This document shows, one piece after another, positions 7,263-36,700 of a stretch of 64,000 nucleotides of DNA. The notes under the pieces were generated by a model, which was not told the DNA's origin, did not search any database, and saw nothing but the letters and a program-made list of their open reading frames with translations. The position numbers and the translations under genes are program-made. Within the stretch, counting starts at the first letter, position 1, and every line of letters begins with the position of its first letter. The stretch is from Heteronotia binoei (taxonomy: Eukaryota). The stretch is from positions 25,482,001 through 25,546,000 of the forward strand of contig NC_083240.1 in assembly GCF_032191835.1 (NCBI RefSeq), given 5' to 3'.

Positions 7263-7436
7263 ACTTCCAAGATCTGATGAAATCAGGCTGGGCCATCCAG
7301 GCCAAGGTGCAGTCATTACCCTCCTGGTATGCCTAGGTTAGTATAGCTTTTAACTGGATTTGCTGAGAAAGGATCACTTCTTCATTCTCTCGTCATTCAT
7401 CCAGCATGATGAGGATAGCAACAATCTTTTCTCTAC

Positions 7437-8015: not shown

Positions 8016-8997
8016 AACTTTAGGGTTAGTAATGCAGTTTAACAAATATGCAAACCATGCATCCTTCAGCCATGTTTGCTCTCCAGTTGGTTCCGTGGAG
8101 AAATTGTACAGAATGTCCATAGTACTGGGTTTTGTATGGAATTGGTCAGTAGCTTTAATTTCCTATGAAAGGCAGATGTTTCTACAATTCAGGCCAGCGT
8201 GTATCAGGTGCTACACTGGTGCATTTGATGGCAGGCTATCTCAGCAGAAAAGGTAAGCATGTCCTACCTCTAGGTTTATTAGGGCATTTCTAAGTAACAG
8301 GCTGGCTCTGGGATGAGAACCTCTTTAAGGCAAATCCACAGCTCCAAGCTATGGCTCAAGATTTAATTCCTGCATCTGTCAAAAGCATTGGGGAGCTTCT
8401 CTGTGGGGCTGAAAGAATGTTCCGTATCTCTGATGGGTCAGACCAAAGTAAGTGTAGGCTGCTGCTATCCAGTTGAGCCAAACCAAAGGCCAGGGATATA
8501 AGGCAGACTCCTATCCAGACTTTGTGGGAGACTCCAGAGGGTATTCTTCCCCTACAGATACTTCACTTTCAGAGCTAGAAACTCCACTTAGCTCCAAACA
8601 CTCCCAAGGTACAAAGAGGAAAGAATTGTGGGGGGTGGGGCTCCCATGCACATATTACTGAGCCAGGTTCATTGGGCCCAATGAGATATTTCTGATTTTT
8701 AAAAGGATTGGACCACATACCTGAATTTCTACACAAATAGACTGTTAACAGCAGAAATCAGTTTTTTTAGGGTTGCAAAGCTCCAAGTGCTGCTTGGAGA
8801 TCTCAGTTACAACTGATCTCCAGATGATAGAGCTCAGTTTCCTTGGAAAAAATGGCTGCTTTGCGGGGTGGACTCCTCATATATCGAAGTACCCCCTCCT
8901 CAAATCCTGTCTTCCCCAGCCCCACCCCCAAAATCTCTGTAGTCCCTTACCCAGAGGTATCTGCCCTTGCAATGCTTCAAAGATGAGCAAAATATAA

Positions 8998-9265
8998 AAA
9001 GGTAAAAGTAGTCCCCTGTGCAAGCACCAGTTGTTTTTGACTCAGGTGCCGTTGCTTTCACAACGTTTTCATGGGGTGCTTTGCCATTGCCTTCCCCAGT
9101 CATCTACACTTTCCCCCAAAAAGCTGGGTACTCATTTTACTGACCTCGGAAGGATGGAAGGCTGAGTCAACCTCCAGCCAGCTACCTGAAACAGCTTCCG
9201 CTGGGATCAAACTCAGGCTCCGACTGCAGTACTGCAGCTTTACCACTCTACGCCAGGGGGCTCTG
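8998..9265 (-). mobile_element. Sauria SINE (Squam1-like)
   Basis: AAAGGTAAAAGTAGTCCCCTGTGCAAGCACCAG...GCTGGGTACTCATTTTACTGACCTCGGAAGGATGGAAGGCTGAGTCAACCT. A second copy lies at ~12182-12400, with tail fragments at ~55740-55795 and ~57965-57995. Confidence 0.8.
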
Positions 9266-9379
9266 AGCAAAATATAGATCACTATAAACTTGTGGATCAG
9301 GGCCCGTTTGGATGCAATGGATCCTCATTATTCAGGGTCTTGTCTTGTTTTAAATACAGGAATTATGTTTTTGAAAGGC

Positions 9380-9880
9380 GGGCTTAAGGGCCCGTGAAAT
9401 GCAGACATACAAAATTCAGATTGAATAAAAGCAACGGGATCCGTTCATCAGATATACGCATCTAATGCAAATAAATGCATTTATTTCCGAATAAGAGGGC
9501 GTAAAAAACGGCGTGCTTTTCGGATTTTCATTTACTCCTCCGGCCGTCCCCATTCCATGCACGCTTCGCTGGGAGTAAGCAATACTGACCGCAAGGGGGC
9601 TTTTTGTCGAGTAAGCGCGCCCAGGGGCTGGCTGCCGTCGGGATAGTGGGGCGGAATCTTCCCACGTGTGCAACTTCTCCTGTCTTGGCCCCGGAAGCGA
9701 TTGCCTGGCTGATGTCGCTCAGCTACGCTGGCGTTTGCAACCGCGGGAAGGAGGAGGGGAGCTGTAGCGGCTGCTCTTTTGCCCATGCGATCCTGCGCAG
9801 CTCTGTCCGGGCCGCTGCTGGCCCTCCTGCTTCCTACGTGGGCCCTAGCCGGCGCCAGCTCCAAGCAGAAGGGTGAGTCG
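9380..9880 (+). promoter_or_regulatory. CpG-island promoter / first exon of SUMF2
   Basis: Sharp local rise in CpG and GC content against a CpG-poor background. GC box GGGGCGG at ~9649-9655. Overlaps the SUMF2 ATG. Confidence 0.75.
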
Positions 9881-12800
9881 CGTTACTTAGGGATGCCACT
9901 CTTCAGATGGGGCCCGGAGATCTCCCGTAATTACAACTCATATCCAGGCTATAGAGATCAGTTCCCCTGGAGAAATTGGCGACATTAAGGGCAGACTCTA
10001 TATATGCTGCTGAGGTCTCTTCCATCCTCACGTTGTACCCTCCCCAAGCTGGTTGTTAGTAGGGTTTCCAGCCTCCAGGTGGGGCCTGGAGATCACCCAC
10101 TTTTATAACTGATCTCCAGCTAAAAGAGATCAGTTCCTCTTGGTAAAATGCCTGCTTTGAAGGGCCCCTCCCCAAACCCCGCCCTCTCCTGGATCCACCC
10201 TCAAAGTCTCCAGGTATTTTGCATCACAGATCTGGCTACCCTAGTGGTTAGGATTGCCAGCTTCGGGTTGGGAAATACCTGGAGATTTGGGGGGTGGAGC
10301 CTGAGGAGGGTGAGTCTGTGGAGAGGAGGAACTTAAGTGGATTTAATACCATTGAGTCCACCTTCCAAAGCTGCCATTTTCTCTAGGTGAACTGATCTGT
10401 GTTGCCTGGAGGGTAGCTGTAATAGAAGATCTTCAGCCACCACCTGGAGGTTGGCAACCCCCGAAGTGGTGCTGGTGGAATGTGCAGTCAAGTCACAGCC
10501 AAGTTATGGCGATGCTGTAGGGTTTTCAAGGGAAGAGATGTTCAAAGGTGGTTTGTCATTGCCTGCCCTGGTATAGCAACCCTGGCTACAGCCCTGAATC
10601 TCCAGGAATTTCTGCACCTGGAGTTGGCAACCCCATTTGGTCTCCTTGTTTTGCCTCACCTCCCTCCAAAATTCAATTATTTTCTGTTAGAAGCCAAGAA
10701 ACCAATAAATGGGGGGCGTGACTTGCAAAAGAAATAATATATATTTTTTCTTCCTGTTACATTTTTTGTACAGTTAAATATCTTGACGCCTGGGAATTTA
10801 CATTCCCAGTTAGTGGTAGCTTCTGCTGACTGAATTTCTGGGGTTGGATGTTCCAAAGACTTTGTTGTTGTTGTTTAGGTTGTTCTTGTTATACTTCCAG
10901 GAAACACATGCATTCTTCCCAGTTCCCGCTGCTGTCAGCAGAGCTATTATTTAGGTATATGATTCTCTCTCTCCTCTTCACAACAACTACTCGTGAGGTA
11001 GAACAGGCTGAGAATATACTGGCATATAATAAATGAAAAAGTTTTGTACTGGAATACAGATTTGAACCAGTGTAGCTCTTAACTGCTACACTGTGCCAGC
11101 TCTGAAATTAAACCTTTGCCTTTGATTTAAATCCTTCTCTCACCAGGCAGACAAGATGAAAACCTGGTACAGCTCTCTGGTGGGAAGTTCCAAATGGGGA
11201 CAAGCTTATTCGATAACAAAAGTGAAGACGGGCCCCCCAGGGAGGTGACGGTCAAGCCATTTCTGATGGACAAATATCCAGTCAGCAACAGAGATTTCCG
11301 GTAAGGGCCAGACTCCATATTTGCTTGCTTCGCGGATGAAATGGACTGGGAATTGCAGTTGAAATGCTGCAAATCCTGTGTACTGACAGTTGTTCCATTT
11401 TATGTAGCACTTGAGAGGAGACAAGGTGCTTTGCGTAGGTAAATTCACTCATCCCTACGGTAGGCCTGTAAGGGAGACTGGTATCGTTAGTCCCCAGGGG
11501 GAGTAGAAACTGATGACTATTTGACTAATGATCCATTTGGCATAGTATGTAGAAAGAATGCTGATATTTTTAATGGGAAGGGTGGTTGCATTAATGTCAG
11601 TGACAGTCTGTGATGGAAGATATTGCTGACACCGGGGTGGCCACACTGTGGCTCAGGAGCCATATGTGGCTCTTCCACACATATTGTGCAGTTCTCAAAG
11701 CCCCACTGGCCCAACCGCCAGCTTGGAGAAGGCATTTCTCTTTAAATCGCTTCAAGCCAGCCAGCAACTTGGATAATACATTTAAAGTCAAAATTGCTTT
11801 CTTTCCCNNNNNNNNNNNNNNNNNNNNNNNNNNNNNNNNNNNNNNNNNNNNNNNNNNNNNNNNNNNNNNNNNNNNNNNNNNNNNNNNNNNNNNNNNNNNN
11901 NNNNNNNNNNNNNNNNNNNNNNNNNNNNNNNNNNNNNNNNNNNNNNNNNNNNNNNNNNNNNNNNNNNNNNNNNNNNNTCTGACATTCATGTCTTGTGGCT
12001 CTCAAACATCTAACATTTATTCTATGTGACTCCTATGTTATGCAAGTTTGGCCACCCCTATGCTGACATCTACTTGAAATTCTGGTGAGGATTGAACCTG
12101 GTGTCTCTTTGCATGCATGGCTGGTGATCTTCAGTTCTTATGCTCTTTCCGCTCCTTGCTACCTCAGGAGTTCAGGTCAGGTAAAAGGTAAAGGTAGCCA
12201 CCTGTGCAAGCACTAGTCGTTTCTGACTCTGGGGTGATGTCACATCACGACGTTTGCACGGCAGATTATTTTATGGGGTGGTTTGCTATTGTTTTCCCCA
12301 GTCATCTACACTTTACCCCCAGCAAGCTGGGTACTCATTTTACCAACCTCAGAAGGATGGAAGGCTGAGTCAACCTTGACCAGGATCGAACTCAGATGGC
12401 AAGCAGAGCTTACCTTTTGGACACTGGGCTATTAAGCTGTTTACCAGTCATTAATGTATGACACTTAGATGACTTTGAGTGCAACACATTAGAATGAGAA
12501 TTTGTGGAAGATGAAATCTGTAGAAGCCAGTGGGATGAAACCACTGGGGAAATAAAGAGAGGATGGCTCAAGCCGTTGAGAAGTCAGTCTGCTTTGGTGG
12601 TTGGTGCGAGATATTGCTGCTGGATGAGGAAAAGGGTCGGAAGACTTCTAAATGTTGTACCACCAGATCTTAACATGGGGGAGGCGGGTGTTTGTATTTG
12701 GCAACAGGGAGTTTGTGCAAGATCAGAAGTACAAAACGGAAGCAGAGGAGTTTGGATGGAGTTTCGTTTTTGAGGATTTTGTACCTGAAAATCTTAAGAA

Positions 12801-15800
12801 GAAAGTGACACAAAAACTGGAGGTAAAAAATAGCACTGGAGATGAATGTCATCCTTTAGGATATGATCTGCGCAAAACTGAGGCTAATCTGTGTGGCAGT
12901 TTTTATTACTTTCAATGCAAATAAAATACTGATAGCAAGATGTGTTCTAACTGTGACTCCTCCACTGCCTTCCAGCCATTGGCAGAGCTACTGTGATGTC
13001 ACAGAAGGCTCACAAATTCTAAATCTGTAAGGCACAAACTCATTGACTGAATGCTGAAATTCTCTGTAGATGATGGGGGGGAAATAGAAATATAGGACTG
13101 CAGGGATCACATAATGAGGGAAAGGGTTGGGAGTGATGCCTCTTACCCAAAAGAAAAGCTTAATTATTTCAAATGCTAAACTTCCTTCTGAGACAATAGG
13201 ACAGAAAAAAGGCATCTTCATATAAATGTCTGTTGCTGCTCACTTAAAACAATAAAACAGGAAAGGTGAGCATTGAGCAATGGGATGGAGGATGGAGGCT
13301 TAGATGCAGCAAGGCTAAGTTTGCTTGGGAAAGGGGTTAGGTACACTCTTCTCCTCCCCCCACCCCGGGTTTAAATTCTGCCCCAATGTAAGTCTAATCT
13401 GCATAATCAATTTGAATGAAGACGAGGCTTTTCAGGACCCCCTAGCTACAAGGCAACCACATTTGGCAACACCTCTGGCTTTAGAGACTCACCAGCTGCT
13501 GCTTGTGCCCTCTGAATCGGAGTGTCAAAATGGGGAGGGACGGTGGCTCAGCTTCATATGTTCATATTTGCTATGAGGACCAGATCTTGACCTTGTCAGA
13601 CTGAGCCATGTGTCATAAAATGCAGGGCATTTTTTTTTTAGCAGGAACGCAGTTCCGGCTGGCTTGGCGGCACTGGGTGTGGCATAATATACAAATGAGT
13701 TCCTCCTGGCCTTTCCCCACAAAAAACCCTGTGTGAAACAATGGTGACATCAGGGGGGTGTGGCCTAATATGCAAATGAGTTCCTGCTGGGAATTTTCTA
13801 CAAAAAAAGCCCTGATAAAATGTAATGCAAGGTCATGGAGATATAAACTTTATAAAGGATACAGACAAACAAACACACTCAGCCTAATCCATCTCATTGG
13901 CTTGCTGAGCTTCAGCCAAGAGAGGCTTGGCTCAGTAGCTCTGCTGTGCAATTGAGAGAGCCTGGTAAAGCTACCTCTCCTTCCCCCACTTCCTTCATAA
14001 GGGGGGAGCTTTGCTCCTGTGCAAGCCTGGCAAAGCAAGTTGTGAAGCAGAAGGAAGCAAGAGAGGGAGAAGGAAGCAGATGACAGTGAGTTGCTCATGG
14101 TCCTGATAAGAAGCCCTCTGGGGGCCTGATTTGGCCCCTGGGCTGCATGTTTGACATCCCTGCTCCAAATCAACTTGCTGGTTTGTTTTGTTTTTGTAAA
14201 GGAAAACTAAGTTTTTGTGGTGGTCTGCACACTGGCATCCAATCACAGCAGAGAGATGGGCTTCTGCTTCCCCCTTAAATTTCCCTTTTCAGGCTGTTTT
14301 TTAACAATGCAATTTCTTTAAAAATGTAGACAGAATGTTGTTATTCTTAATGGGAAGGGTGGTTGTATTAATGCCAAGTGACAGTTTTACTTGTCTTAAA
14401 CCCACTTGTACTTCTCCTTTCAGTCTGCACCTTGGTGGCTTCCTATAGAGAAAGCATTTTGGAGACAGGTGAGCGAAACCAAGGGGTAAGGGAAGTCCTG
14501 GAAAACTTTGTGGATACTGAATTCATAGCCCAAACTGTGATTCACAAATGGTCATGCTGAAAGTTCAGTGGTAGGATTGGGATTTGCCATGCAGAAAACC
14601 TGGACTCAGATCCCAGATAGTGCAAAGTTAATTTTGGGAACAGGTTGTGGCCTGATTCCTGATTCAGTCTCCAGTGTCTCCACTCAATGGAGCATGAGAT
14701 GGCAAAACCCTTTTTCTACCTAAGACCTTAGAGAGCTGCAGCCAGATAGAGGAGACAATGGCTAGATCAACCTTTGGAATCCAGACGCAGTGTGATGGGG
14801 ATACCACAAAATGGCTGCCACACACATAGAAGAAGCCTCAGTAAAGGGAAAACAAGAAGTAATTTAGAAATACTCTAGGAAAGAGAAGTGGGAGAAAATA
14901 AAACCAACATGGTGGCAGCTGCTGCTGAAACATTATTTTAATTCGCACAGCCAATTGGTTCTCCAGTGGCCAGTCAGAAGCCCCTGCTGGGTAACAGCCC
15001 CCACTTGTCCTCACCCACTTCCTAAAACACTTGGTGGGCACCATGTTGGGGACCCTTGGGTAGATGAACTGAGGGTCTGATTTAATATAAGGCAGCTGTA
15101 TATCAAAGAGAGGCGATATCTTGTAATGTTTAGAATGTCGGCTTAGGGCTTGGAAGACAAGTTCAAATCCTTACTCAGCTTGGAGGCTCACTGGCTACCT
15201 TAGGACCAGTTTCTCACTCTTGGCTTAACGTATCTCACAGGGTAATGCACACTGGGAGAACTATGAAGAAGAAGATATTGGATTTATATCCCGCCCTCCA
15301 CTCTGAATCTTAGAGTCTCAGAGTGGCTTACAATCTCCTTTATCTTCTTCCCCTACAACAGACACCCTGTGAAGTAGGTGGGACTGAGAAACCTCTCCCA
15401 GGAGCTACCCTTTCAAAGACAGCTCTGTGAGAGTTATAACTGATCCAAGGCCATTCCAACAGGTGCAAGTGGAGGAGTGGGGAATCCAGTTCTCCCAGAT
15501 AAGAGTCCGCACGCTTAACCACTACATCAGACTGGCTCTCAAACTGGCTGTCTTGAACTCTTCAGAGATGAGGCAGGATGGAAATGTGACATAATTTGAG
15601 GAGTGCTATGGATCAGTGACATAATGCCTGCTTTGCATGCAGAAGGTCCCTAGTTCGATCCCTGACATTTCCCACTGAGCAGCAGGGGTTGAGAAAAGTC
15701 CTTTTTCTGCCTGAGCATGTGGAGGGCAGCTACCAAATCTAACAATACTAAGCTAAAGAGATGGATGGGCTGAGCTTGTATAAGGCAGCTTCACCTCTTT

Positions 15801-18800: not shown

Positions 18801-20107
18801 CCTGTGATGTAGGTATGGCTGGGAGAGCTCTTCCAGCAACTGCCTTTTCAAGGACAACTCCTACGAGAGCTATGGCTGACCCAAGGCCATTCCAGCAGGT
18901 GCAAGTGGAGGAGTGGGGAATCAAACCTGGTTCTCCCAGATGGTCCACACAACCACTACACCAAACTGGTTCTCAATGAGGGGTTCGTTCTAGCACTGTC
19001 GTCATCATATTTAGGGCTAGGAACTAGAAACGGTGGTTAGGTATGGCAACCCTCGTGGTCAGCTGCTTTCCTGCTAATAGCAAACTTGATGGCTGTCAGT
19101 AGGGGGAATAAAACAGGACCACCCTCAGCAATGTGGAGGTTTCTGCCCATTTGGAAGACTCCCAGGTATGCAGGAGGCCATTAATGTGTAAATCATAAAA
19201 AGAACTGGAAGTTGTCTCTAGCGAATCACCAGCCGTTTCCGTATCTCAGGGATCTGTGACCTGCTAGGAAATACATGGGAATGGACTGCCTCAGCCTATC
19301 GCCCTCCCGGACGCACATCCCGCCAGCCTGCTCAGGAGATGCGTGTCCTGCGGGGAGCTTCTTGGATCGACACGGTGGACGGGACGGCCAATCACAAAGC
19401 TCGGGTGACCACAAGGTGGGTGTAGTCCATGGAAGCTCTTTGCATTGACTTTTTGCTGACTAATTGGTGCCCCATTTCCACCCTCTAGGCCTGACATCGT
19501 CTGTTAGAAGGGGCATTCCACTCAGTACATGAGAAAAACAGGACTGCATCTTTTAAAATGGCACCTGCTTTTCAGGACTTTTGCACATTTCAGGGATGAT
19601 TTTTCTAAGCAACCACAGAAACGTAAAACACTAGATCAGTAAACCAGGGTTCCCCAACATGGTGCTCATCAGAATTTCCCTTGGTGTCCACTGAGCTTTT
19701 TAGAATGTGGGTGGGGCTGTTGTTAGGCAGAGCGCATTATTGGTTTCCCTCCTTCAAATGGAGGAGTTTTCCACTGGAGAAATTAGGACAACTAATAAGT
19801 ACCTGGTTTTTCCTTAGCCACTGTGTAGTTCCATTTTTGTTCAGACTTTCCTTCTTCCCAGGAGATGTTAGGAGGGAGATAGTACATTTGGCTCCACTTC
19901 CTGCAGTGGCCATTTTGGTTTTGGTCCAGCCTCTTCCAGTGGGACCAAAATTCCAAAGGTGCCCACAAGCTCAAAAATGTTAGGGACCCCAGAGCTAATA
20001 CCATTTTATTTCCTAGGATGGGGAACACACCAGACTCTGCCTCAGACAACCTGAGCTTCCGTTGTGCTGCCAGCCTGGAAAGTGTGAGCAAAAACACAGA
20101 ACTCTGA
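9785..20107 (+). CDS. SUMF2: Inactive C-alpha-formylglycine-generating enzyme 2 (pFGE, SUMF2), 9 exons, 316 aa
   Basis: Exons: 9785-9872, 11147-11300, 12708-12822, 14424-14468, 15887-16037, 16945-17000, 18025-18109, 19250-19415, 20017-20107 (TGA); 951 nt in frame. Signal peptide [23 protein letters not shown]. Motifs [77 protein letters not shown]. Lacks the SUMF1 catalytic Cys motif. C-terminus NTEL. Confidence 0.96.
10059..10462. mobile_element. Short TAGGGTTGCCA / TGGCAACCCTA-terminated repeats (hAT-Blackjack-like MITE family, very abundant)
   Basis: Two adjacent copies with (T)AGGGTTGCCA-type ends and shared cores CAGTTCCCCTGGAGAAAATGGCTGCTTTG and CTGGAGATTTGGGGGTGGAGCC. Further copies at ~16600-16830, ~35071-35570, ~37545-38010, ~39965-40190, ~53870-54358, ~55660-55910, ~59790-60020 and ~61770-61950. 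The superfamily is assigned from the TIR only. Confidence 0.55.
11808..11977. other. Assembly gap (170 N) inside a hAT-like element
   Basis: Run of N from 11808 to 11977. Confidence 0.99.
13623..13814. mobile_element. hAT MITE (CAGGGC...GCCCTG) with a perfect 8-bp TSD
   Basis: TIR CAGGGCATTTTTTT / AAAAAAAGCCCTG. TSD ATAAAATG at 13615-13622 and 13815-13822. Confidence 0.85.
15265..15540 (-). mobile_element. Squam3-like (Ther1/MIR-derived) SINE, long gecko-type subfamily
   Basis: (GAA)n tail + ATATTGGATTTATATCCCGCCCTCCAC...TTAACCACTACA; the head has tRNA A/B boxes on the minus strand. Near-identical copies at ~18718-18972, ~23555-23824, ~25192-25432 and ~47508-47787. Confidence 0.75.
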
Positions 20108-20527
20108 AGGGGATTGTCTTCAAACAAGAGCCTTGGATCTTTTCTCCTGTGGAGAACCGTCATGAGAGCGGTGGATTTTAGGGCTGGATCAAGATTCTGC
20201 TGCTCCTAATTGGGACCAAAGACTAGCATGCAATAATGGAAATGTTTCCATTGGTTGTAACATGGACATCAGCATTCTAGGCAGTAACACTGTGGAAAGA
20301 TACCAGAAACAGATCATGGCCGCCAGGTCTGTTTCTGTGGCTCAGGAGCAGAACGATGTATTAAAGAAATTCCAGCTTCTGTGCTTGGCATCTTCTGCTT
20401 GGGCATGGGTAGAGCCACCATTGGTCAGAAGCAACAAAACTGGGCCAGGTGGAGCAGTGGTTAACGGGCCAAAGCGGTGTCATGTGCTGTATCAAATCTT
20501 AAGTATTCTAGGTTGGTTATTCTAGTA

Positions 20528-20712
20528 GGAGGCTGTGGCTCAGTGGCAGAGCCTCTGCTTGGCATGCAGAAGGTCCCAGGTTCAATCCCCGGCATCTCCA
20601 ATTAAAAGGATCAGGCAGCAGGGGATGTGAAAGTCCTCAGCCTGAGACCTTAGAGAGCCACTGCCTGTCTGAATAGACAATACCAGCACAGGTGGACTGA
20701 TGGTCTGAGCCA
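20528..20712 (+). mobile_element. tRNA-derived SINE (Squam2-like) in the SUMF2 3' UTR
   Basis: A box TGGCTCAGTGG, B box GGTTCAATCCC, then body AAAAGGATCAGG...CCTGAGACC...GAGCCACTGCC. Other copies at ~22884-23086, ~23966-24178, ~26354-26572 and ~56818-57027 (-). Confidence 0.7.
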
Positions 20713-20773
20713 TGTGTGTGAGTTGTTCTTCCAGCAGCAAAACCCTGTTGCTCATCAAGACCAAACCATATCC

Positions 20774-20794
20774 AATAAACAAAGCACATTTATT
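20774..20794. terminator. Back-to-back polyadenylation signals for convergent SUMF2 (+) and PHKG1 (-)
   Basis: AATAAA on + at 20774-20779. AATAAA on - (TTTATT on +) at 20789-20794. Confidence 0.45.
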
Positions 20795-21221
20795 GATGTT
20801 TTTGGTAGAAGTTTAGAAAACGGATACATCCCTTTCCCAAGGCACTGTGGTAATAAATAGTAATAAATATTCCAAACCCATTGGCCTTTTGGAGCCAACT
20901 CTAGCCATAACTTTTCTGCACTAAATACGGCAAGGACTCATGCAAAGCAGGGTGGGTGGCATTTTGGCAATGGGGAGCTATGATGGTAACTATTAATGGG
21001 GGGAGGGACTAGCATGCTCTTTTCCTAAGAGCATCTGTCCCTTTAAGAGCTGCGGATTTGGTGAACAGCTAATTGGTGGTTTACCCTTTGGATGTCTCCA
21101 TCTTACAACATGTGATAGAGAAAGTGGTGCTTGTTGAACTTTTGGAGCTGGGTTTCAGAAATGGGGATTAAACTAATTAGGGCAGAACTACAAATACTAT
21201 TTTAACATTAGATAGAACCAA

Positions 21222-21495
21222 GCGGGCAGCCGTGTTGGTCTGAAGCAGTTGAACAAAGCAGGAGTCAAGTTGCACCTCTAAGACCAACCAATTTTTATTT
21301 AGAACGTAAGCTTTCTTGTGCTCTTAAGCACACTTCATCAGACGAGGAATGCGGCACAGTGAGCAAAGCCATTATGTATGGCTTTGCTCACTGTGCTGGA
21401 TTCCTCGTCTGATGAAGTGTGCTTAAGAGCACACGAAAGCTTACGTTCTAGATAAAAATTGGTTGGTCTTAAAGGTGCAACTTGACTCCTGCTTT
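21222..21495. mobile_element. Palindromic Penelope-like non-autonomous element with hammerhead ribozyme cores
   Basis: Arms 21255-21372 and 21378-21495 are near-perfect inverted repeats. + strand: CGT-CTGATGA-A-GTGTGCT-TAAG-AGCACAC-GAAA-G-CTT-ACG at 21406-21445. Confidence 0.75.
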
Positions 21496-21742
21496 ATTTT
21501 AACATTATTTCATTTGGCTGGGGAATATATACCCATTTGCTGTTTCTTCACCCCAAGATCTTAGAACAAAATGGGATAGAGACTGAAACAAAGTGTTTGA
21601 ACAATAGGAGAAGACTTCTGCAATCTGGCTCATTCTGCTATGTATTGGGGTGCTTAATGGAGAAAGTGTATATCACTGCGGGGGAGGTTTTTGCCTTAGC
21701 TGTTAATACATTCAGAGTCCTGTGTTGTCACCGCATTCAGAC

Positions 21743-24700
21743 TCAGAAGAACTCTTCCTCGGCTGCCAAGCTGAGCAGGATGGCTTTGGGCGTGTTTTCA
21801 AACAGAGCCGCCCTGTTCTGAGCTTCTCCCTTCTTCACCCAGTGGCCGTAGATCCGGAAGGCGCAGGCGTCAATCAGCTTGCGGATGGGTTTCAAGCCGT
21901 AAGGGTCACGCCGTATCACCTCTGTGGTGACTGGCTTGACGTTCCGATAATTGAGGTAGATTCGGACCGATGCTAAGACCGTCAAGCAGATAACCTGGAG
22001 GGAAACCAAATCCTTAGCCTTAAAATTTGTAGCCTCTTGGGAATAGCCACTGATTCATCCATATCAAGTTGTCTCTTAACTAATGGAATAACTGATTCCA
22101 GTTTAGGAGACTTTGAACATACCCAAATGAGAATTTCCTGAATCTGTTCAAATATATGTCCACCATAAAGACCCAGAGTCAAAGTGTGTGGCAGTGCCCT
22201 TGGGCTATTAAATTTGCAGCATATATCACCTGCTATATTGCCCCCCCTTTTTTTGCCACCCTGAGTTTTTGGGAGGGGTGGGATAAAAATGTATACCCTC
22301 CAATGGCTAGTCAAGGCCCACAAGCATATTAATACGAGTCCATACACAGATCACCATCTATACATTTTGTGGTCACTAATTTAGGGTAACTACTGCACCT
22401 TTGCAATTGCTAGCTGCTCATGAAACACACAGCAGGTAGTTTCTGGGTAAGCAGCTTTCTTTGGGCATGTGCTTCCAGACCAAATGAATGAAGCCAAATC
22501 TATGCAAGGCACCATTTAGGTTTGGTGCCATTTTAAAAGCAAACACCTACACTGCACATTGAAACCGGTTCTTGAATTATCAGTACTTGCAACTGAAGGA
22601 TCTCGGATCAATGTTGTTTTGCAACAGGACTTTGGGGATGTATGGAAAAAAATTGTGTGTGCATATATATACGTGCATACACACAGATACACACTCCCAT
22701 TTTCCAAAAGGTTTGCAAAAGGGAGCTAGGAGTCTCATCAATTGTTACCATCCTCAGAAAACTACAATTCCCAAGATTCTTTGGAGGAAGCCATGTGAAT
22801 TAAAACAGCCATAAAACTAGCATATGTTAGTGGCATAGAACTCTTCATAACAGTTCTCAGCACTGTTCCCATCATTGGCTGGGGAATGGCTCAATGACAG
22901 AGCATCTGATTGGCATGCAGAAAATCCCAGGTTCAGTCCTCAACATCTCCAGTTTTAAAAAGGACCAGGCAATTGATCTGAAAGACCTCTGCCTGAGACC
23001 CTGGAGTGCTGCTGCCAGTCTGAGTAGACTCTACTGACCTGATTGGCTGATGGCCCAGTTCAGTATAAAGCAGCTTCATGTGTTCAAAGCTACAATGGCC
23101 AAAACCAGTTTTAAAGCTGATTTAGCTGTATAGCATAGTTGTGCTCCAAAATAATTGCTGAGCTGCCCTGGCTATAAGAAAGCAGGGATAAGCTTGGGTA
23201 CCCGAAATTTCCGGAACGGGCTAAAGTGTCGGACTTCCTCCACTACATATTGCTGGAAGAAAGGGTGAGTGAGAGCATCCTCCACAGTGTATCGACGTTC
23301 TGACTTCACCACCAGGCAATGGGCAATCTAAAAACAAAAGCACAAGACGGGGGGTTGGTTCCAGAGATGGAAACGCTGCACTTTTTGCTCCGAGTTCTCA
23401 CAATGTCTATTATCTGAGCATCACAAGGACTTGCGACCAGGGATGGTTCCAGGTTTGGAGGGGCCCTGGGTGGAGAGTAACCAGGGGCCACCTCATCTCC
23501 CCTGGTCACCACCAGCCCCACCAACAGCTGCCTTCCTGTCCATCATCTGCTTAAAAAGAAGATATTGGATTTATACCCCGCCCTATACTCTGAATCTCAG
23601 TGTGACTTACAATCTCCTTTACCTTCCTCCCCTACAACAGATACCTTGTGAGGTGGGTGGGGCTGAGAGAACTCTCACAGAAGCCGCCTCTTCAAGGACA
23701 GCTCTGTGATAGCTATGGCTGACCCAAGGCCATTCCAGCAGCTGCAAACGGAGGAGTGGGGAATCAAACCCAGTTCTCCCAGATAAAAGCCGGTGCACTT
23801 AACCACTACACCAAACTGGCTCTCAAGTGTCCTTCCTCTGCTGCAAACCCTCCTACAAATCCTTTCTCTGATGGCACCACCGCTCTGCACCCCTTCCCCA
23901 TTGACACAGAGCAGTATATGTGTCATGGAGTATGGGTGCTGGAAGCCTAAGCAGATGTACTACATGGGGAGGGACGGTGGCTCAGTGGCACAGCATCTAC
24001 TTGGTAAGCAGAAGGTCCCAGGTTCAATCCCCGGCATCTCCAACTAAAAAGGGTCCAGGAAAGTAGGCATGAAAAACCTCAGATTGAGACCCTGGAGAGC
24101 TGCTGCCAGCCTGAGTAGGCAATACTGACTTTGATGAACTGAGGGTCTGATTAAGTATAAGGCAGCTTCATATGTTCATGTGGTGGAGAGGAACACTGGC
24201 AAGTGGCAGAGAAGATATATGGAAAACAGGGCAGTGGTAGTGGGCCTTACCTAGCAGCTGCCTCAGCTGCTTGAAACAATCCTGCTGCTTCAATGCCACC
24301 TACCAGGTCTTTGACGGTATCTGACTGGTCATCCCACTCCGGGGAGCCAAACTTGTAATCTCCATTCATGATCATCCGCAGCATCAACATCTGTTTCCGG
24401 TGCCAGAACGGGGGCGATCCGGCCAGCAACGTATACATGATGACTCCTGTGCTCCACCTGGGAACAAACAAACCCACCCTTTTTTACACGGCCTCTAGAA
24501 GAAAAATCACGTCACCTTTTCCATGTTGAGTTTGCTCCTCATTTTGAAAAACAAACACCTTCAGTGAGCTTGCATCTCTGTATGTGTGCGTGTGCATGTG
24601 AGATTTCTGCTTCCTAAATGATAAAACAGTCTGCAAATTGACCAGGATGGCCTGATCTTGTCAGATCTTGGAAGCTAGGTAGGGTTGGCCCTGGTTAGCA

Positions 24701-27700
24701 TTTGGATGGGAGACCACCAGGGAAACCCAAGGTTGCTAAGCAGAGGCAGGCAAAGGCAAACCCCCTCTGAATGTCTCTGCATTGAAAACCCTGCAAGGTT
24801 GCTGTAAGTCGGCTGTGACTCAATGGCATTTTTTTTTTTAAAGACAGTAATGAACACGCCAGAAAATAATTACTCTCCTGCCCGGCAGGAGTGGCTGCAG
24901 GGTTGTTTCCCCTCCCCCTTTGTCTTTAGGTACCCACTGGCTCCTCCGTTGCAGCTTCCCACCCCCACCCCCTACAAACACACACACTGCTGTCATCAGA
25001 CTCCGTGGAAGAGGACAGCACGCATTCTCATGCTCCTTTTGGCCCCATTCGTGCCCACAGGTCTGAAAAAAGAGCACAAAAGGGGTGGCTAAAAAGCAGT
25101 GGTCGATGAGTTCTGGGCTGAAGTAGAGGAGGTGCTGCACTGCTCAGTTCTTTGGTGATTTCTTCCTTCACTATTATCAGGCATGGTTTCCAAAAGAAGA
25201 AGAAGACGACTGCAGATTTATACCCCGCCCTTCTCGCTGAATCAGAGACTCAGAGCGGCTTACAATCTTCTTCCCCCACAACAGACATCCTGTGAGGTGG
25301 GTGGGGCTGAGAGGGCTCTCACGGCAGCTGCCCTTTCAAGGACAACTCTTGCAAGAGCTATGGCTGACCCAAGGCCATTCCAGCAGCTGCAAGTGGAGGA
25401 GTGGGGAATCAAACCCAGTTCTCCCAGATGGGAAATCAACTCAGTGTGTTTGCCAAGGGGTGGTCCCTCAGCCAGGCTTTGGGCCCTTGGCAGGTGCCCT
25501 AACCAGAAAAAGCCCAGCAAGAACTTATTTGCATATTAAGCAACACCCCCTGACGCAACGCCAGCCGGAACTGCGTTCCTGTGCATTCCTGCTCGGGGAA
25601 AAAAGCCCTGGTCCTTAATTATGCTTGCTCCTGGCACTGGCCAGCCCTATCGCCAGTTGATGTTGCCACTGGCAACCGCTTCCCTCCATGCAGCTTATTC
25701 ATGGGAGGACACAGATAAACATGATGATGCTTGTAGGTGGAAGGATGAGAAAAGGAAAAGATTTCATTTTTGTGTTCAGTCCTTCCAACAGCTGCATTTT
25801 TCCCATATCCATATAGAAATAGGGATACACATTGTTTTGCTTACATGTCAACTTCTTTCCCGTAACCTGGGTGGTCTGGATCCATGGAACATTCTAATAT
25901 TTCAGGTGCTAAGTAGCCAGGAGTTCCACAGACCTCTGCAAGAAAATCAATAGGATTTTAAAAAATGTAAAACTTTTCATACCTTTTTATTATTTAGGCG
26001 CTTTTTTTAAAGCTATCCCTCTCCCTACCTAGCTTGTGGGCTCAAGACAGGACTTAATCCAGCAGGGTTCTTCTTAGTCATGAGGACTAGAAATAGAACC
26101 AAATGTTCAAAGACAGTATTCCTTTGAATATCAACTACTGTAGGGTCAGAGCTGAGGGAAGTATGTGGCATTTATGGACTTCTCAGAGGCAGCTGGCTGG
26201 CCATTGCTGGAGAATGCTGGAATAGATGTGATTTTGATGTGATTTAGAAAGACTCCTTGCGGTTTCAGTTCAAATCAATATGCAAAAGTCAGAGGTCCAA
26301 TCAAGGTAATTCTCACATCAAGAATGCACATATTTTCATTGCAGTTTACCTAAGGGAAGGGGCTGTGGCTCAGTGGAAGAGCCTCTGCTTTGTGTGCAGA
26401 AGGTCCCAGGTTCAGTCCCCGAAACCTCCAGTTGAAAGGATCAGGTAATAGGTGATGGCAAAGACATCCACCTGAGACCCTGAAGAGCTGCTGCTAGTTG
26501 GAGGAAAGACCATACTGACTTTGACAGACCAATGGTCTAATTCAGTATAAGGCAGCTTCATGTGTGATCATATATATATGTGGCTGCTACATAACTGGAA
26601 TCTCAAACAAAGCACATGCTATCAAAATACTTAGCTTCTGCCCAGTGCTTGCAAAACCAGAACAAGTAATGTAAATAGGTGGGGAAAGTAGCATAAATTA
26701 CTCCAAATTAGAAAAAAAATATTCAAATTGATTCAAGATGCAGAGAATACAGATGCAGAGAATACAGAATCTTAGATTGCCAAGTGGGTGCTTATGGAGA
26801 GGGTGCTTATGGGCCTCCTTATCCACCTAGATCAGGGGTGTCAGACATGTGACCCGAGGGCCAAATCAGGTCCCCAGAGGGTTCCTATCAGGCCCCCAAG
26901 CAACTGGCTGTCGTCTGCTTCCTTCTCCCTCTCTGCTTCTTTCTGCATCACAGCTTGCTAAGCCAGACTTGCTCAATCTCACAGAAGCTACAAAGCAAAG
27001 TCTCTATTTTCCCCCATTGGCTGAGACTCCTCCCTTGGGGAGGAAGGGGGGAGGAATAGCTTGCTTTGTCAGGCTCTCTCAATCGCACAGCAAAGCTACT
27101 GAGCCAAGCCTCTCTTCTGTTGGCTGAGGCTCCTCCCGCTCCTGGTCCATCTGGGGAAGGAAGGAAAAAGCCAGAACTTCCTTTGCCCAGTTCCCCAGAT
27201 TGCACGGGAAAGATACAAAGAAAGCGCCTTTAAGACCAAGTGCTAATGTTTTAAGCATGTTTTATTTTATTTTTTTTTAATCTTCAAATTGTGTTTGTCT
27301 GTGTCCTTAATAAAGCTTATATCTTTGCTACCTGGTGTTACATTTTATGATGCACATGGCCCGGCCCAACAAGGTCCCATTTATTTCAGATCCAGCCATC
27401 ATAACGAATGAGTTTGACACCCCTGACCTAGACCGTAGCAGGCCCCAGGCAGCCCTGCCCCACCCCAGCATCCAGTCTCTGCAATAAGCTGGTCATATCA
27501 CCTTTGAGTTTTTCGCCTCTCTGCAGCTGACACGAGAAGCCAAAGTCCGTCAGCTTGATGTTCATGTCATCATCCAGGAGGATGTTTTCTGGCTTCAGGT
27601 CTCGATGAACGATGTCCATGGAATGAAGGTACTTGATGACTTCCAGGAGGGCACGCATGATCTTTCTAAAGGGAGGAAAGCACCCACCAGTCAGCGAAAA

Positions 27701-33700: not shown

Positions 33701-36700
33701 AAGTAGAATTTTTGCTCACAAGACTCTACAGCTTACAAGAAGTATTTTAAGACCCTTCCTCCACATCCTGCCACATCTAGGTTGGTCCTCAGTCATCGCC
33801 TAGACAGTCATCTGAGTCTGTCATTAAACTGGCAAGAAAATAGCTTGATGACATTCTGATTATGCAGAGTTGAATTTTAGAAATTTTTCTTTAAATGTCC
33901 TGCTGGCAGATCCATCTTCTAAATTCACACAGTCACCCACGTATGTGTGCAAAGCATACTATCTCCATAAATGCTTTCCTGTGTGCATAACTGAGTGGCA
34001 CAAGTTAGTCCCCAAACACTTGGTACTTACAAGTCAAACACCAAGAAGAAGAAGGTGTGAGATTCAAAGCTGTCCTTCAGCTGGACTGGAAATAAAACAC
34101 AGTGTCTTAATAACAGGGGCTCATGTTGTAACCACCGATCACTCCTGCAAATATGATGTGCATTATGCTGTAAAACCAGTTTGTTATGGCTTCTCTTTGA
34201 AGTTACTTTTAAGACTCCTGCCCACTGCCTGCATCCAGACTATTGCAAACAGTGTCTGCCTCTTTATAAGCCCACCTGAAGTTTGCCAGCTCTGGGCTAG
34301 GAGCTTGTGGAGGACAAGTTTGGAGAAGGGAGAGGCCTCAGTAGGATATTATGGCCATAGAGTCCATCCTCCAAAGCAGCCATTTTCTCCATGTGAACTG
34401 ATCTCTGTTGTCTGGATATCAGTTTTAATTCCAGGATCAGTTGTAATCTCCAGGCCCCACCTAGATGTTAGCAGCCCTAGCAAACTGGGAACTAAGATTT
34501 TCTGATGAGGCTCTGAACGCCGCCTTTTATGCATCCTAGGGCACTTTCACACATGCTAAATAAAGCAATTTCAAATGGATTTTGCCATTTCACACAGCAA
34601 AATTCAGCTGCAAAGTGCATTGAAAGTGTATTATTTAGTGCATGTGAAAGTGTCTCTAGTTTATTATGCAGGACAGGGCTGGCTTGGAATGCCCCCTGCT
34701 TTTCCCTTACCTTTTCGAGGAAACATTCTTGTTCCTCCAGAGTTTTGGCAGAGAAAACTTTTTTTGGCTGCTGCTTGTAGATCTGCTGACTGATTTGATT
34801 GTTTTCATTGTTAGTTTTAGTGGGTTAGGATCTGTATTCTTTAAAGCTTGTATGTCACTTGAACATCAATACTGAAAGGCAGGTCAGTAAAATAAATAAA
34901 GGTCTCCTTGGATCTGTAGCTTAAGATAAACATCAGAAGCCACAGATGCAAGACAAAGGCATTTCTACACTTCTCTCTTTAGTGGTTCCAGATCAGTGGC
35001 TTCCTCTGGGTCTATTGTCAGTAATGAATACATCTTAAAAAAAAAACAAAACCACTTGGTCTATAAGTGTTAGGGTTGCCAATCCCCAGTTTGGGGCAAG
35101 GGATCCCCAGGTTTAGAGGCCCTCCCCTCACTTCAGGGTCATCAGAAAGCGGGGGGGGGGGAATGTCTACTGGGCACTCCATTACTCCCTATGGAGACTG
35201 ATTCCCATAAGATATAATGGAGAATTGATTTGCAGGTATCTAGGGCTCTGGGGGGCCCCTGTTTTTGAGGTAACCAAATTTGCAGCATAGCATCCGATGC
35301 CTCTCTTCAAAACACCCCCCAAGTTTCAAAAAGATTGGACCCAGGGGTCCAATTCTATGAGCCACAAAAGAAAGTCTCCCATCCTTCATTATTTCCAGTG
35401 GAGGGAAGGAATTTAAAAGATGTGCAGTCCCTTTAAATGTGATGGCCAGAATTCCCTCTGGAGTTCAATCATGCTTGTCACAACCTTGCTCCTGGCTCCA
35501 CCCCCAATGTCTCCTGTCTCCACCCCCCAAAGTCCCCAGTTATTTCTTGAATTGGACCTGGCAACGGTAATGTGTGCACTGAAAAAAGCATATCTGTTTT
35601 ACCAAACAGATGTGATTATGTTAGGATAGTTAAAAGACATTTACTATTGACCATAAACAGATCTTGCAGATTCACCTCCAAAACAAGATTTTACATAAAC
35701 TAAATTACCATTCTGGGGTTTCTTGGGGAAGACATGGCAACAGATCTGGTTTTATTTTTATAGCAGATATCAGAATCAACCTAGAACAGCTCCGGACTGG
35801 CCCTGAAGCTGCCTGAAGCAGAAATTCCTAATGACTGTGCCTCTACAAAAATTTGACTAGTAAACAATGGAATAATTATTAGGGTTTGTAGAATCTTTCA
35901 GGCTCAAGTGCCGTGTTCTACTGGAGAAAGTTTTTCCTCCAGACGTTTCGTTCTCGGCTACGGAGAACATCCTCAGTGGCGTTGCAGTCGGAGCAGGCGC
36001 TCTGACCTTCTTGGCTGCTCAATGCACAGCAGCCAAGAAGGTCAGAGCGCCTGCTCCGACTGCAACGCCACTGAGGATGTTCTCCGTAGCCGAGAACGAA
36101 ACGTCTTGAGGAAAAACTTTCTCCAGTAGAACACGGCACTTGAGCCCGAAAGATTCTACAAACCCTAATGATGTTACCAGCCGTGAAAGCCTGAAATCTT
36201 TGATAATGGAATAATTGACAATATCCTCCAAATCTGCCACCTCACTGGCCCATGAGACTCTGGGAATGCACGCTGATTGATAGCACGAAATAAATCAGAA
36301 ATCATCATCCGAGAGTCAGCCTTGGAACAGGACGTTAATTGCATTTGTCCAGCATAGCTTTGCAAACTTTGGCTTCTCGGACTCAAGTCTGCCAACCCCT
36401 CAGTGATGGGAAACACTTCCAGGAATCACAAGACTTCGTGCAAGAATGATAAACAGGCCCCAAACACTTGCTAGCAATGCTTCTGCGTACCAGGAAGTAC
36501 ACAGCAGCAAGCTGCTGGAACAAAAAGAAACAAGCAGATTCCAATTGGACAGAGAAACTGGCAATATTCAAAAGCATTCTCAATCTACTGGGAAACATCA
36601 ACATGAAATTGCTGAATTGGAATGTATCGGCAGGTATTAATTGCATTAACCACGATGGAACATTTCATAGCCACTGCAAGTTTTAAATTGCTTAATATAA

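What the first reader, a model, noticed from the sequence alone, without database searches (positions are those of the whole stretch)
21222..21495. Second hammerhead-bearing palindrome, of a different family, between the SUMF2 and PHKG1 stop codons
Seen: ~118-bp inverted arms with a 5-nt loop. + strand CGU-CUGAUGA-A-GUGUGCU(UAAG)AGCACAC-GAAA-G-CUU-ACG (21406-21445) has an intact core, a 7-bp stem II, loopless palindromic stem III (AGCU) and a 3-bp stem I. The minus-strand copy has one stem II mismatch. The architecture matches the intron-3 element but the sequence is unrelated. It lies 250-520 nt downstream of the PHKG1 stop. Inference: if PHKG1 uses the distal poly(A) signal at 20789-20794, the mature mRNA carries a long hairpin and a latent ribozyme in its 3' UTR. 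A proximal signal at 21493-21498 would exclude it, so alternative polyadenylation could switch it in or out.
Basis: partly seen in the sequence, partly recalled or inferred. Interest (0 to 1): 0.7.

Follow-up and report, generated by a model that had tools for sequence, protein, structure and literature searches.

The report
Fold-back Penelope-like retrotransposon insertion
The mirror-image sequence between the SUMF2 and PHKG1 genes of this lizard genome is an ordinary, fairly young insertion of two head-to-head copies of the tail end of a very abundant Penelope-like jumping gene; its small hammerhead-ribozyme motif comes with the family and is unlikely to cut the PHKG1 message.

Summary
A near-perfect palindrome (117-nt arms, 5-nt loop) carries a complete minimal hammerhead motif on the + strand (21406-21445). 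The mirror copy on the - strand has lost the G10.1-C11.1 pair. A 13-bp target-site duplication brackets a 284-bp insert (21211-21494). The left arm is 44 nt longer, an extra 'tail' at one end only. The sequence also belongs to a very high-copy dispersed family. These match the published signature of Penelope-like element (PLE) insertions: an inverted 5'-truncated copy, an optional one-sided tail, and an AT-rich target. The motif meets every sequence criterion of PLE minimal, dimer-dependent hammerheads. Three older relatives in the window have the same head-to-head, one-tailed layout; one keeps a 12-bp duplication, and their cores have decayed. The unrelated Poseidon-type palindrome in PHKG1 intron 3 is built the same way. 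RNA-seq shows RNA on both sides of the insert and across its left junction, but the strand is unknown. In any transcript the hammerhead lies downstream of its perfect complement (hairpin about -220 kcal/mol against about -10). The copy in PHKG1 sense is the mutated one, and no dimer partner exists. The scan has found this kind before, on other DNA of this genome. No link to a reverse-transcriptase ORF was obtained for this family.

The parts
21198..21210 (.). Left copy of the 13-bp target-site duplication TATTTTAACATTA
   Evidence: Exact direct repeat with 21495-21507. The longest shared word in 2000 shuffled flank pairs was 12. It is AT-rich with ATT motifs, as reported for Poseidon_Ac cleavage sites (PMC11167929).
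21211..21494 (.). The whole 284-bp insert: two head-to-head 5'-truncated copies of the 3' end of a PLE-type repeat
   Evidence: Bounded by the TSD. k-mer depth inside it is 548-13191, against about 5 in the flanks.
21211..21254 (-). 'Tail': a 44-nt 3' extension present on the left arm only
   Evidence: Arm comparison. A homologous tail ending in ...TCTATC is seen on exactly one arm of each of three older pairs and on a single copy. The literature describes an optional 30-40-bp tail, often at one end only (PMC8557442, PMC11167929).
21211..21372 (-). Left arm: the copy whose sense strand is the - strand (162 nt, with tail)
21305..21344 (-). Hammerhead motif of the - strand copy, damaged (C11.1 to A at 21316). 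The predicted cut is between 21308 and 21307
   Evidence: Other copies in the reads carry G at 21316, which is C11.1 (table 3). It fails the descriptor.
21373..21377 (.). 5-nt junction between the two arms; it is a 5'-truncation or fold-back point, not the family's natural end
   Evidence: Other copies continue 5' past this point (loose ends at 21373/21375, table 7).
21378..21494 (+). Right arm: the copy whose sense strand is the + strand (117 nt, no tail)
21406..21445 (+). Intact minimal type-I hammerhead motif. Parts: helix I 3 bp; CUGAUGA at 21409-21415; unpaired A at 21416; helix II 7 bp (21417-21423 with 21428-21434) and loop UAAG; GAAA at 21435-21438; palindromic AGCU at 21438-21441; U17 at 21442. 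The predicted cut is after 21442
   Evidence: descriptor hit; 0 in 300 shuffles. Folding gives helices I and II.
21495..21507 (.). Right copy of the target-site duplication
21493..21498 (-). AATAAA on the - strand, created by the insert/TSD junction (2 nt of insert plus 4 nt of TSD); it is absent at the left TSD copy
21294..21299 (-). AATAAA on the - strand inside the left arm. It is a family feature about 10 nt 3' of the cut site; the + copy has lost it through a private A-to-G change at 21451
   Evidence: nearly invariant A run; 21451 G>A in other copies.
20789..20794 (-).
21743..21995 (-). PHKG1 last coding exon; stop codon at 21745-21743
   Evidence: Translation. Match to PDB 8jfk_C residues 305-386, E=1.4e-37. 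An RNA contig ends its match at 21995 with 93 nt spliced on (table 8).
19883..20107 (+). SUMF2 last coding exon; stop at about 20105-20107
   Evidence: Open frame. Upstream exons hit FGE-sulfatase and PDB 1y4j SUMF2.

Best explanation
This is a dead, fairly young retrotransposition product of a very abundant Penelope-like element (PLE) family, or of a non-autonomous family moved by PLE enzymes. It consists of two heavily 5'-truncated copies of the element's 3' end, joined head to head with their 3' ends pointing outward, and inserted into an AT-rich site with a 13-bp target-site duplication. The hammerhead motif on each arm is the family's own minimal, dimer-dependent hammerhead. It was copied in passively, not acquired by the host genes. 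The following steps are inferred, not shown. The PLE endonuclease cut the TATT...ATTA target and reverse transcription started at the RNA's outer start site, which gives the tail-bearing left arm. After about 160 nt the polymerase switched to its own nascent cDNA and copied it back; this would explain why both arms stop at the same element position, 5 nt apart. The intermediate was then resolved at the tail boundary and joined to the other, staggered target end, which leaves the right arm tail-less and produces the TSD. Twin priming from both cleaved target strands is the alternative route. Since insertion the arms have drifted apart (5 of 117 positions differ). One of those changes inactivated the minus-strand core. 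In any transcript that covers both arms, the RNA folds as a roughly 120-bp hairpin and the ribozyme fold cannot form.
For: Structure of the insert: a 13-bp TSD, unequal arms and a 44-nt one-sided tail.

High-copy family: k-mer depth in X1 is 548-13191 inside the insert against about 5 outside; 72-86% of raw reads run on into unlike sequence; depth is lowest at the centre, as expected from 5' truncation; other copies continue 5' past the junction; other fold-back joints occur at different positions.

Relatives in the window: three older head-to-head pairs (43562-43768, 58649-58895, 63040-63226), each with the homologous tail on exactly one arm, and one with a 12-bp TSD.

The Poseidon-type palindrome at 35878-36204 has the same plan and a 12-bp TSD. 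By eye it matches the hammerhead/ORF-start region of the Repbase Poseidon_Ac consensus.

[quoted passage not shown] That paper also reports pairs on opposite strands 100-700 bp apart.

PLE literature: an inverted 5'-truncated adjacent copy and a 30-40-bp tail, often at one end only (PMC8557442); Poseidon_Ac cleaves and extends both target strands, prefers ATT, and has two RT start sites that define the tail (PMC11167929).

Neutral decay: the differences between the arms are private mutations away from the family consensus (table 3), and the older relatives have lost their cores.

Hairpin dominance: -220 to -230 kcal/mol for the hairpin against -7 to -12 for the hammerhead fold.
Against: No reverse-transcriptase or GIY-YIG ORF was linked to this particular family. 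The window has none and the lizard genome could not be searched. PLE membership therefore rests on architecture, on the motif type, and on the parallel with the Poseidon-type copy.

The tail is 44 nt, slightly beyond the published 30-40 bp.

Helix I is only 3 bp, against 4-5 in the fluke families (2 in D. virilis).

No Rfam hammerhead model scores it.

The fold-back mechanism is inferred from the end product only.

The + strand core is fully intact and RNA is present around the element, so some cleavage in a transcript that contains only the right arm cannot be excluded.
Confidence: 0.85

Rival explanations
1. The palindrome is a functional part of the PHKG1 3' UTR: a long hairpin plus a latent self-cleaving ribozyme, switched in or out by choice between the proximal (21493) and distal (20789) poly(A) signals.
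For: The hexamers exist, and the proximal one was actually created by the insertion junction. RNA covers both flanks at a depth similar to the PHKG1 last exon, and one contig crosses the left junction by 28 nt. The nearby intron bin is silent in X1, which argues against DNA contamination.
Against: The PHKG1-sense copy has lost G10.1-C11.1. Its complement is transcribed first, and the hairpin is about 200 kcal/mol more stable than the ribozyme fold. The motif class needs a same-sense partner, and none is nearby. Activity of this class is low even as dimers (PMC4209133; PMC6765202). No read-end pile-up occurs at the cut site. Older copies of the family decay freely. The libraries are unstranded, and in run X7 the left flank has reads while PHKG1 has none.
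Confidence: 0.05
2. It is a miniature inverted-repeat DNA transposon (MITE or foldback element) that merely happens to contain hammerhead-like boxes.
For: A near-perfect palindrome with a direct repeat on each side is also what a MITE looks like. A genuine TIR element of that kind seems to sit at 38058-38594.
Against: The termini are not symmetric: 162 against 117 nt, with a 44-nt extension at one end only. Other copies continue through the centre and have fold-back joints at other positions. Relatives occur as single arms and as pairs with unequal inner ends. TSD lengths vary (13 and 12 bp). Coverage falls towards the centre, as with 5' truncation.
Confidence: 0.03
3. The transcribed palindrome is used as a hairpin-RNA gene or substrate: a precursor of small RNAs, or a double-stranded RNA target for ADAR editing, Staufen or innate sensors, which affects SUMF2 or PHKG1 expression.
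For: It forms a roughly 120-bp almost perfect duplex. RNA is present at the locus. Generic long-hairpin microRNA models score it, but all score below their thresholds.
Against: All microRNA hits are far below gathering scores and simply reflect any long hairpin. No A>G or T>C differences were listed inside the element (table 3), although reads there are dominated by other copies. Nothing suggests selection: the arm mutations look neutral.
Confidence: 0.07

Closest known systems
Minimal hammerhead ribozymes of Penelope-like elements (Cervera and de la Pena 2014, PMC4209133; Lunse, Weinberg and Breaker, RNA Biol 14:1499, cited in PMC6765202)
   Same: Type-I layout. CUGANGA and GAAA boxes. [quoted passage not shown] A G10.1-C11.1 pair. 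A long helix II (7 bp). A short helix I. No loop 3, with a palindromic 15.2-16.2 so that helix III can form only between two copies. Massive dispersed copy number. Pairs on opposite strands 100-700 bp apart. Presence in reptiles.
   Different: Helix I is 3 bp here, against 4-5 in the fluke families. The specific stem II sequence and the 3' region were not matched to any published family. Location in a pseudo-LTR next to an RT/EN ORF could not be shown.
PLE insertion architecture (Craig et al. 2021, PMC8557442; Poseidon_Ac biochemistry, PMC11167929)
   Same: Strong 5' truncation. An inverted truncated copy directly adjacent, which forms an inverted repeat. An optional tail at only one end. An AT-rich target with ATT. 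Target duplication. An enzyme that cleaves and extends both target strands.
   Different: Here there is no full-length unit between or beside the inverted copies, only two roughly 120-160-nt 3' ends. The tail is 44 nt rather than 30-40.
Poseidon-type fold-back in PHKG1 intron 3 of this same window (35878-36204)
   Same: Same plan: a 12-bp TSD, head-to-head arms, an 8-nt centre, an extension on one arm only, and a min-HHR with an unpaired nucleotide after A9 and a palindromic helix III.
   Different: No alignable sequence similarity outside the core boxes. Its helix III is ACGU rather than AGCU, so the two could not form a mixed dimer. Its hammerhead overlaps the ORF start, as in Poseidon_Ac, whereas here the AUG within the core is followed by a stop after four codons.
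Discontinuous hammerhead in rodent Clec2 3' UTRs (Martick et al. 2008, cited in PMC4209133; functional details from my own knowledge)
   Different: The Clec2 ribozyme is a complete, highly active motif with tertiary contacts, conserved at orthologous loci. The motif here is a transposon-borne minimal form, masked by its complement, and the copy in PHKG1 sense is damaged.
Animal non-LTR retrozymes (PMC7229834; bioRxiv 10.64898/2026.07.22.740005)
   Same: Short ORF-less repeats with type-I hammerheads, proposed to be non-autonomous derivatives of PLE pseudo-LTRs. They are present in most of the sampled reptiles.
   Different: Retrozymes are direct tandem repeats that give circular RNAs. This is a single inverted pair with one hammerhead per strand.

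Membership tests
PLE-associated minimal hammerhead (min-HHR) | Conserved core boxes CUGANGA and GAAA, with H (not G) at the cleavage site | tested here: met
   Both copies have CUGAUGA, GAAA and U17.
PLE-associated minimal hammerhead (min-HHR) | [quoted passage not shown] | tested here: met
   A at 21416 on the + copy and its mirror on the - copy.
PLE-associated minimal hammerhead (min-HHR) | G10.1-C11.1 pair closing a long helix II (6-8 bp) | tested here: met
   The + copy has G-C and 7 bp. The - copy has a private C-to-A change at 21316, while other copies of the family keep C.
PLE-associated minimal hammerhead (min-HHR) | No loop 3; palindromic 15.2-16.2, so that helix III forms only between two copies | tested here: met
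   AGCU at 21438-21441. The self-duplex of AGCU is -2.5 kcal/mol.
PLE-associated minimal hammerhead (min-HHR) | Lies in the pseudo-LTR of an element encoding an RT and a GIY-YIG endonuclease | not testable with these tools
   No such ORF in the window. The host genome is not in any searchable collection. A metagenome scan found nothing.
PLE-associated minimal hammerhead (min-HHR) | Self-cleavage, as a dimer | not testable with these tools
   Needs a bench assay. No read-end pile-up at 21442/21443 in three raw-read runs (table 6), which is only weak evidence.
PLE insertion architecture | 5'-truncated copy with an adjacent inverted 5'-truncated copy | tested here: met
   Other copies extend 5' beyond the junction. 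Three more pairs in the window.
PLE insertion architecture | Optional 30-40-bp tail, often at one end only | tested here: met
   A 44-nt extension on the left arm only. A homologous tail sits on exactly one arm in 4 of 4 pairs of this superfamily in the window. It is slightly longer than the published range.
PLE insertion architecture | Target-site duplication at an AT-rich site | tested here: met
   A 13-bp TATTTTAACATTA. A 12-bp TTCAAGAATATA at the 43.6-kb relative.
Rfam hammerhead families (type I, II, III, HH9, HH10) | Score at or above the family's gathering threshold | tested here: not met
   No hammerhead hit at the gathering threshold on the window, nor at E<=10 on 21100-21620. This is expected, because these models require a closed helix III.
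MITE / foldback DNA transposon | Symmetric terminal inverted repeats reaching both ends; fixed TSD length; unit-length copies | tested here: not met
   Asymmetric ends. Variable fold-back joints, and copies that run through the centre. Single-arm relatives.
Non-LTR retrozyme | Direct tandem repeats, each with a same-sense hammerhead | tested here: not met
   The two copies are inverted, and there is only one descriptor hit per strand in this region.
microRNA precursor families (MIR821, MIR814, MIR1509, mir-4861) | Score at or above the gathering threshold | tested here: not met
   125 bits against 249, 56 against 90, 53 against 87, and 38 against 100. These are generic long-hairpin matches on both strands.

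The most novel reading that the evidence does not exclude
The insertion has been co-opted at the RNA level. It created a new AATAAA 245-250 nt after the PHKG1 stop and brought another inside its left arm. It also places a roughly 120-bp perfect double-stranded hairpin in RNA made from the convergent SUMF2/PHKG1 3' region. So it could shift 3'-end choice, or mark the transcripts for editing, decay or small-RNA production, in this lizard lineage.
Probability: 0.08. Interest if true: 0.4.

Novelty: new member of a known kind. Interest (0 to 1): 0.15.

Why it matters
It matters mainly as a clean-up. Palindromes with 'hammerhead ribozymes on both strands' recur throughout this genome, and they should be read as routine Penelope-like fold-back insertions, not as host regulatory ribozymes. 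The copy is a tidy textbook example of PLE insertion signatures: TSD, one-sided tail, fold-back at a shared truncation point, and an AT-rich target. Together with its older relatives in the same window, it could feed a genome-wide study of how PLE reverse transcription produces inverted copies and tails. A small practical point is that the insertion created one poly(A) hexamer and imported another downstream of PHKG1, which is worth remembering when annotating that gene's 3' end.

Tried and rejected
- Rfam at gathering thresholds on the whole window, and at E<=10 on the locus: no hammerhead family, only sub-threshold generic hairpin microRNA models.
- A metagenome-contig scan with the hammerhead pattern, hoping for host-derived contigs with a full-length element: no match. 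I did not use the second scan because lizard DNA is unlikely there.
- Pfam on the ten longest ORFs from 33-59 kb of the window, to find a PLE RT/endonuclease: nothing.
- The search of earlier findings by sequence: blank.
- Lunse et al. (PMC5785218) is not held, so it is cited only through PMC6765202.
- Cofolding two copies of the motif gave an extended stem II intermolecular duplex rather than the helix III dimer. The true hammerhead dimer crosses in nested notation and could not be scored directly; only the 4-bp AGCU duplex was scored.
- A computed alignment of the 36-kb element to the Poseidon_Ac consensus was not run, because that consensus exists only as paper text and has no reference. 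The comparison was made by eye.
- The read data could not settle strand, bridging or poly(A) site use. The libraries are unstranded, reads are 100 nt against a 284-nt repeat, and only about 6% of each raw-read run was sampled.

Full report
**1. What is in the sequence.**

The palindrome is real. The repeat finder reports arms 21252-21372 and 21378-21498 (121 nt, 95% complementary, 5 nt between them). Reading both arms outward from the centre shows 112 of 117 matches up to 21494, after which similarity stops.

- a 3-bp helix I (CGU/ACG);
- the CUGAUGA box;
- one unpaired A;
- a 7-bp helix II closed by UAAG;
- GAAA;
- a loop-less palindromic AGCU;
- U at the cleavage position.

The mirror copy on the - strand (21344-21305) differs at 21316. 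That change turns C11.1 into A and breaks the G10.1-C11.1 pair.

I wrote a descriptor modelled on the published 'min-HHR'. It found two hits in the 64-kb window: this one and one in the intron-3 palindrome at 35979-35939. It found none in 300 dinucleotide-preserving shuffles. The motif is therefore not a chance match. No Rfam hammerhead model matches, even at E<=10. Only generic long-hairpin microRNA models match, and all score below their thresholds.

**2.

A 13-bp direct repeat, TATTTTAACATTA, lies at 21198-21210 and 21495-21507. In 2000 shuffles of the flanks the longest shared word was 12. It brackets a 284-bp insert, 21211-21494.

The arms are unequal. The left arm, whose sense strand is the - strand, is 162 nt. 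The right arm is 117 nt. The difference is a 44-nt extension (21211-21254) at the outer, 3' end of the left copy only.

**3. It is a copy of a high-copy family.**

I laid four RNA runs on 19900-22100.
- Inside the insert, k-mer depth in run X1 is 548-13191, against about 5 in the unique flanks.
- In the raw-read runs, 72-86% of what was laid runs on into unlike sequence.
- Depth is lowest in the central bin, as expected when most copies are 5'-truncated.
- Other copies continue 5' past 21373/21375, so the centre here is a truncation point.
- Other fold-back joints occur at other positions (21241/21304 on opposite strands; 21301-21383 with a 6-nt filler).
- At 21217, 21278, 21316 and 21451 the other copies carry the alternative base. 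The differences between the arms are therefore private, post-insertion mutations, and the family consensus keeps C11.1.

**4. Relatives inside the window.**

A blastn search with the long arm found diverged relatives (70-82% identity) at about 43.6, 53.6, 54.5, 58.7, 62.6 and 63.1 kb. Three of them are again head-to-head pairs with their 3' ends pointing outward.

In the alignment, the region 3' of the hammerhead is the best conserved part. A homologous tail ending in ...TCTATC is present on exactly one arm of every pair (4 of 4, counting this one) and on the single copy at 54.5 kb. The 43.6-kb pair keeps a 12-bp TSD, TTCAAGAATATA.

The hammerhead cores of the older copies are decayed, so inserted copies are not maintained by selection. 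Compared with the older relatives, the young family carries a 4-nt insertion that lengthens helix II from about 5 to 7 bp.

**5. Comparison with the literature.**

Cervera and de la Pena (PMC4209133) define PLE minimal hammerheads by these features:
- the core boxes;
- the G10.1-C11.1 pair;
- a long helix II of 7-8 bp;
- a short helix I;
- palindromic 15.2-16.2 with little or no helix III, so that only dimers are active.

They note thousands of dispersed copies, pairs on opposite strands 100-700 bp apart, presence in reptiles, and very low activity in vitro, even for dimers.

Craig et al. (PMC8557442) describe PLE insertions as strongly 5'-truncated. These insertions often have an inverted 5'-truncated copy directly adjacent, and a 30-40-bp tail that is often present at one end only.

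The Poseidon_Ac study (PMC11167929) reports that:
- the enzyme cleaves and extends both target strands;
- it prefers ATT in AT-rich DNA;
- it starts reverse transcription at two internal sites whose spacing defines the tail;
- no RNA-seq reads end at the hammerhead cut site.

Every one of these features that can be read from sequence is met here. The tail is slightly longer (44 nt) and helix I slightly shorter (3 bp).

The intron-3 palindrome (35878-36204) has a 12-bp TSD, AATGGAATAATT, and an extension on one arm only. By eye it matches the hammerhead/ORF-start region of the Poseidon_Ac consensus. It shares no alignable sequence with the present element.

**6. What was not shown.**

I could not link this family to a reverse-transcriptase/GIY-YIG ORF. 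The window holds none, a metagenome scan found nothing, and the host genome is not searchable with these tools. The family could be the 3' end of an autonomous PLE, or a short non-autonomous element that borrows PLE enzymes, as proposed for animal retrozymes (bioRxiv 10.64898/2026.07.22.740005).

The route to the palindrome is also inferred. Both arms stop at the same element position, 5 nt apart. For that reason I favour a switch of the polymerase onto its own nascent cDNA, followed by resolution at the tail boundary. Twin priming from both cleaved strands is the alternative, and it fits the 43.6-kb pair better, because the inner ends of that pair are unequal.

**7. Gene context and the 3' UTR idea.**

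- PHKG1's last exon is confirmed: PDB 8jfk_C residues 305-386, E=1.4e-37. Its stop is at 21745-21743.
- SUMF2 is confirmed by FGE-sulfatase hits and PDB 1y4j. Its stop is near 20105-20107.
- Minus-strand AATAAA hexamers lie at + coordinates 21493, 21294 and 20789. The first is formed by the insert/TSD junction and is absent from the left TSD copy, so the insertion created it. The second is a family feature inside the left arm.

RNA contigs in X1 cover these stretches:

| Stretch | Depth |
|---|---|
| 20015-20560 | 28 |
| 20581-20935 | 7.7 |
| 20923-21238 | 5.3 |
| 21536-21700 | 4.3 |
| 21733-21995 (with 93 nt spliced on) | 4.4 |

The intron bin 22046-22100 is empty. In X6 the raw reads give 3-7x on 20862-21083 and on 21528-21823, falling to about 1.8x in 21084-21157.

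So RNA exists on both sides of the insert, and it crosses the left junction by 28 nt. That is just short of the tool's 31-nt rule for bridging. The libraries are unstranded, nothing bridges the repeat, and no poly(A) or cut-site pile-ups were listed. In run X7 (sample S5) the left flank has about 1.5-2x of reads while PHKG1 has none; the other run of that sample, X5, has none there. This points to some read-through from the SUMF2 side. The question of which gene's transcript contains the element stays open.

**8. Would the ribozyme work there?**

Probably not, for five reasons.
- The whole insert folds into a roughly 120-bp hairpin of -220 to -230 kcal/mol in either orientation. The helix I plus helix II hammerhead fold is worth -10.6 kcal/mol (+ copy) or -7.4 kcal/mol (- copy).
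- Because the 3' ends point outward, the antisense arm is always transcribed before the sense hammerhead.
- The copy in PHKG1 sense is the one that lost G10.1-C11.1.
- Helix III can form only with a second same-sense copy. AGCU self-pairing is worth only -2.5 kcal/mol. The only other descriptor hit in the window is 14 kb away, on the other strand, and has ACGU.
- This motif class is barely active in vitro (PMC4209133; PMC6765202).

**9. Verdict.**

The interpretation as a regulatory latent ribozyme is not supported. The feature is an ordinary fold-back insertion of a Penelope-like retroelement family. Earlier notes of this scan describe the same kind elsewhere in this genome, which one follow-up called a gecko. 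I treated those notes as leads and tested the architecture independently here. Interest is low. The remaining novel possibility is an effect of the insertion on 3'-end choice, or on double-stranded RNA pathways, at this convergent gene pair.

Noticed in passing
window 35878-36204: The Poseidon_Ac-like fold-back insertion in a PHKG1 intron has its own 12-bp target-site duplication, AATGGAATAATT (35866 and 36205), and an extension on the right arm only. A min-HHR descriptor hit lies on the - strand at 35979-35939.
   Followed up: partly
window 43562-43768; 58649-58895; 63040-63226; 54523-54640; 62558-62601: Older relatives (70-82% identity) of the 21.2-kb family. Three are head-to-head pairs with the tail on one arm only. 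The 43.6-kb pair keeps a 12-bp TSD, TTCAAGAATATA. Their hammerhead cores are decayed.
   Followed up: partly
window 21294-21299 and alignment A1: The family consensus carries a conserved AATAAA about 10 nt 3' of the hammerhead cut site. The young family also has a 4-nt insertion that lengthens helix II from about 5 to 7 bp.
   Followed up: no
window 20529-20600, 23971-24042, 26359-26430, 56957-57027: Four tRNA-derived SINE heads (Rfam tRNA, 36-50 bits), which resemble squamate tRNA-derived SINEs from memory. The one at 20529-20600 sits in the SUMF2 3' region and draws k-mer depth above 100,000 in an RNA run.
   Followed up: no
window 1129-1266: SNORA15 (77.9 bits, full length) next to a TCP-1 chaperonin exon at 3369-3599. 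This suggests CCT6A-SUMF2-PHKG1 synteny, as in mammals (the human gene order is recalled from memory).
   Followed up: no
window 38058-38594: An element with 157-nt terminal inverted repeats (97%) around a 223-nt centre that contains a further 44-nt inverted repeat. It looks like a DNA-transposon or MITE copy.
   Followed up: no
window 20774-20885 (+) and 20765-20794 (-): If PHKG1 uses its distal AATAAA (20789) and SUMF2 uses any of its AATAAA sites (20774, 20852, 20862), the two convergent mRNAs would overlap tail to tail by tens of nucleotides.
   Followed up: no
window 11808-11977: An assembly gap (170 N) inside the SUMF2 gene region; it was left untouched.
   Followed up: no
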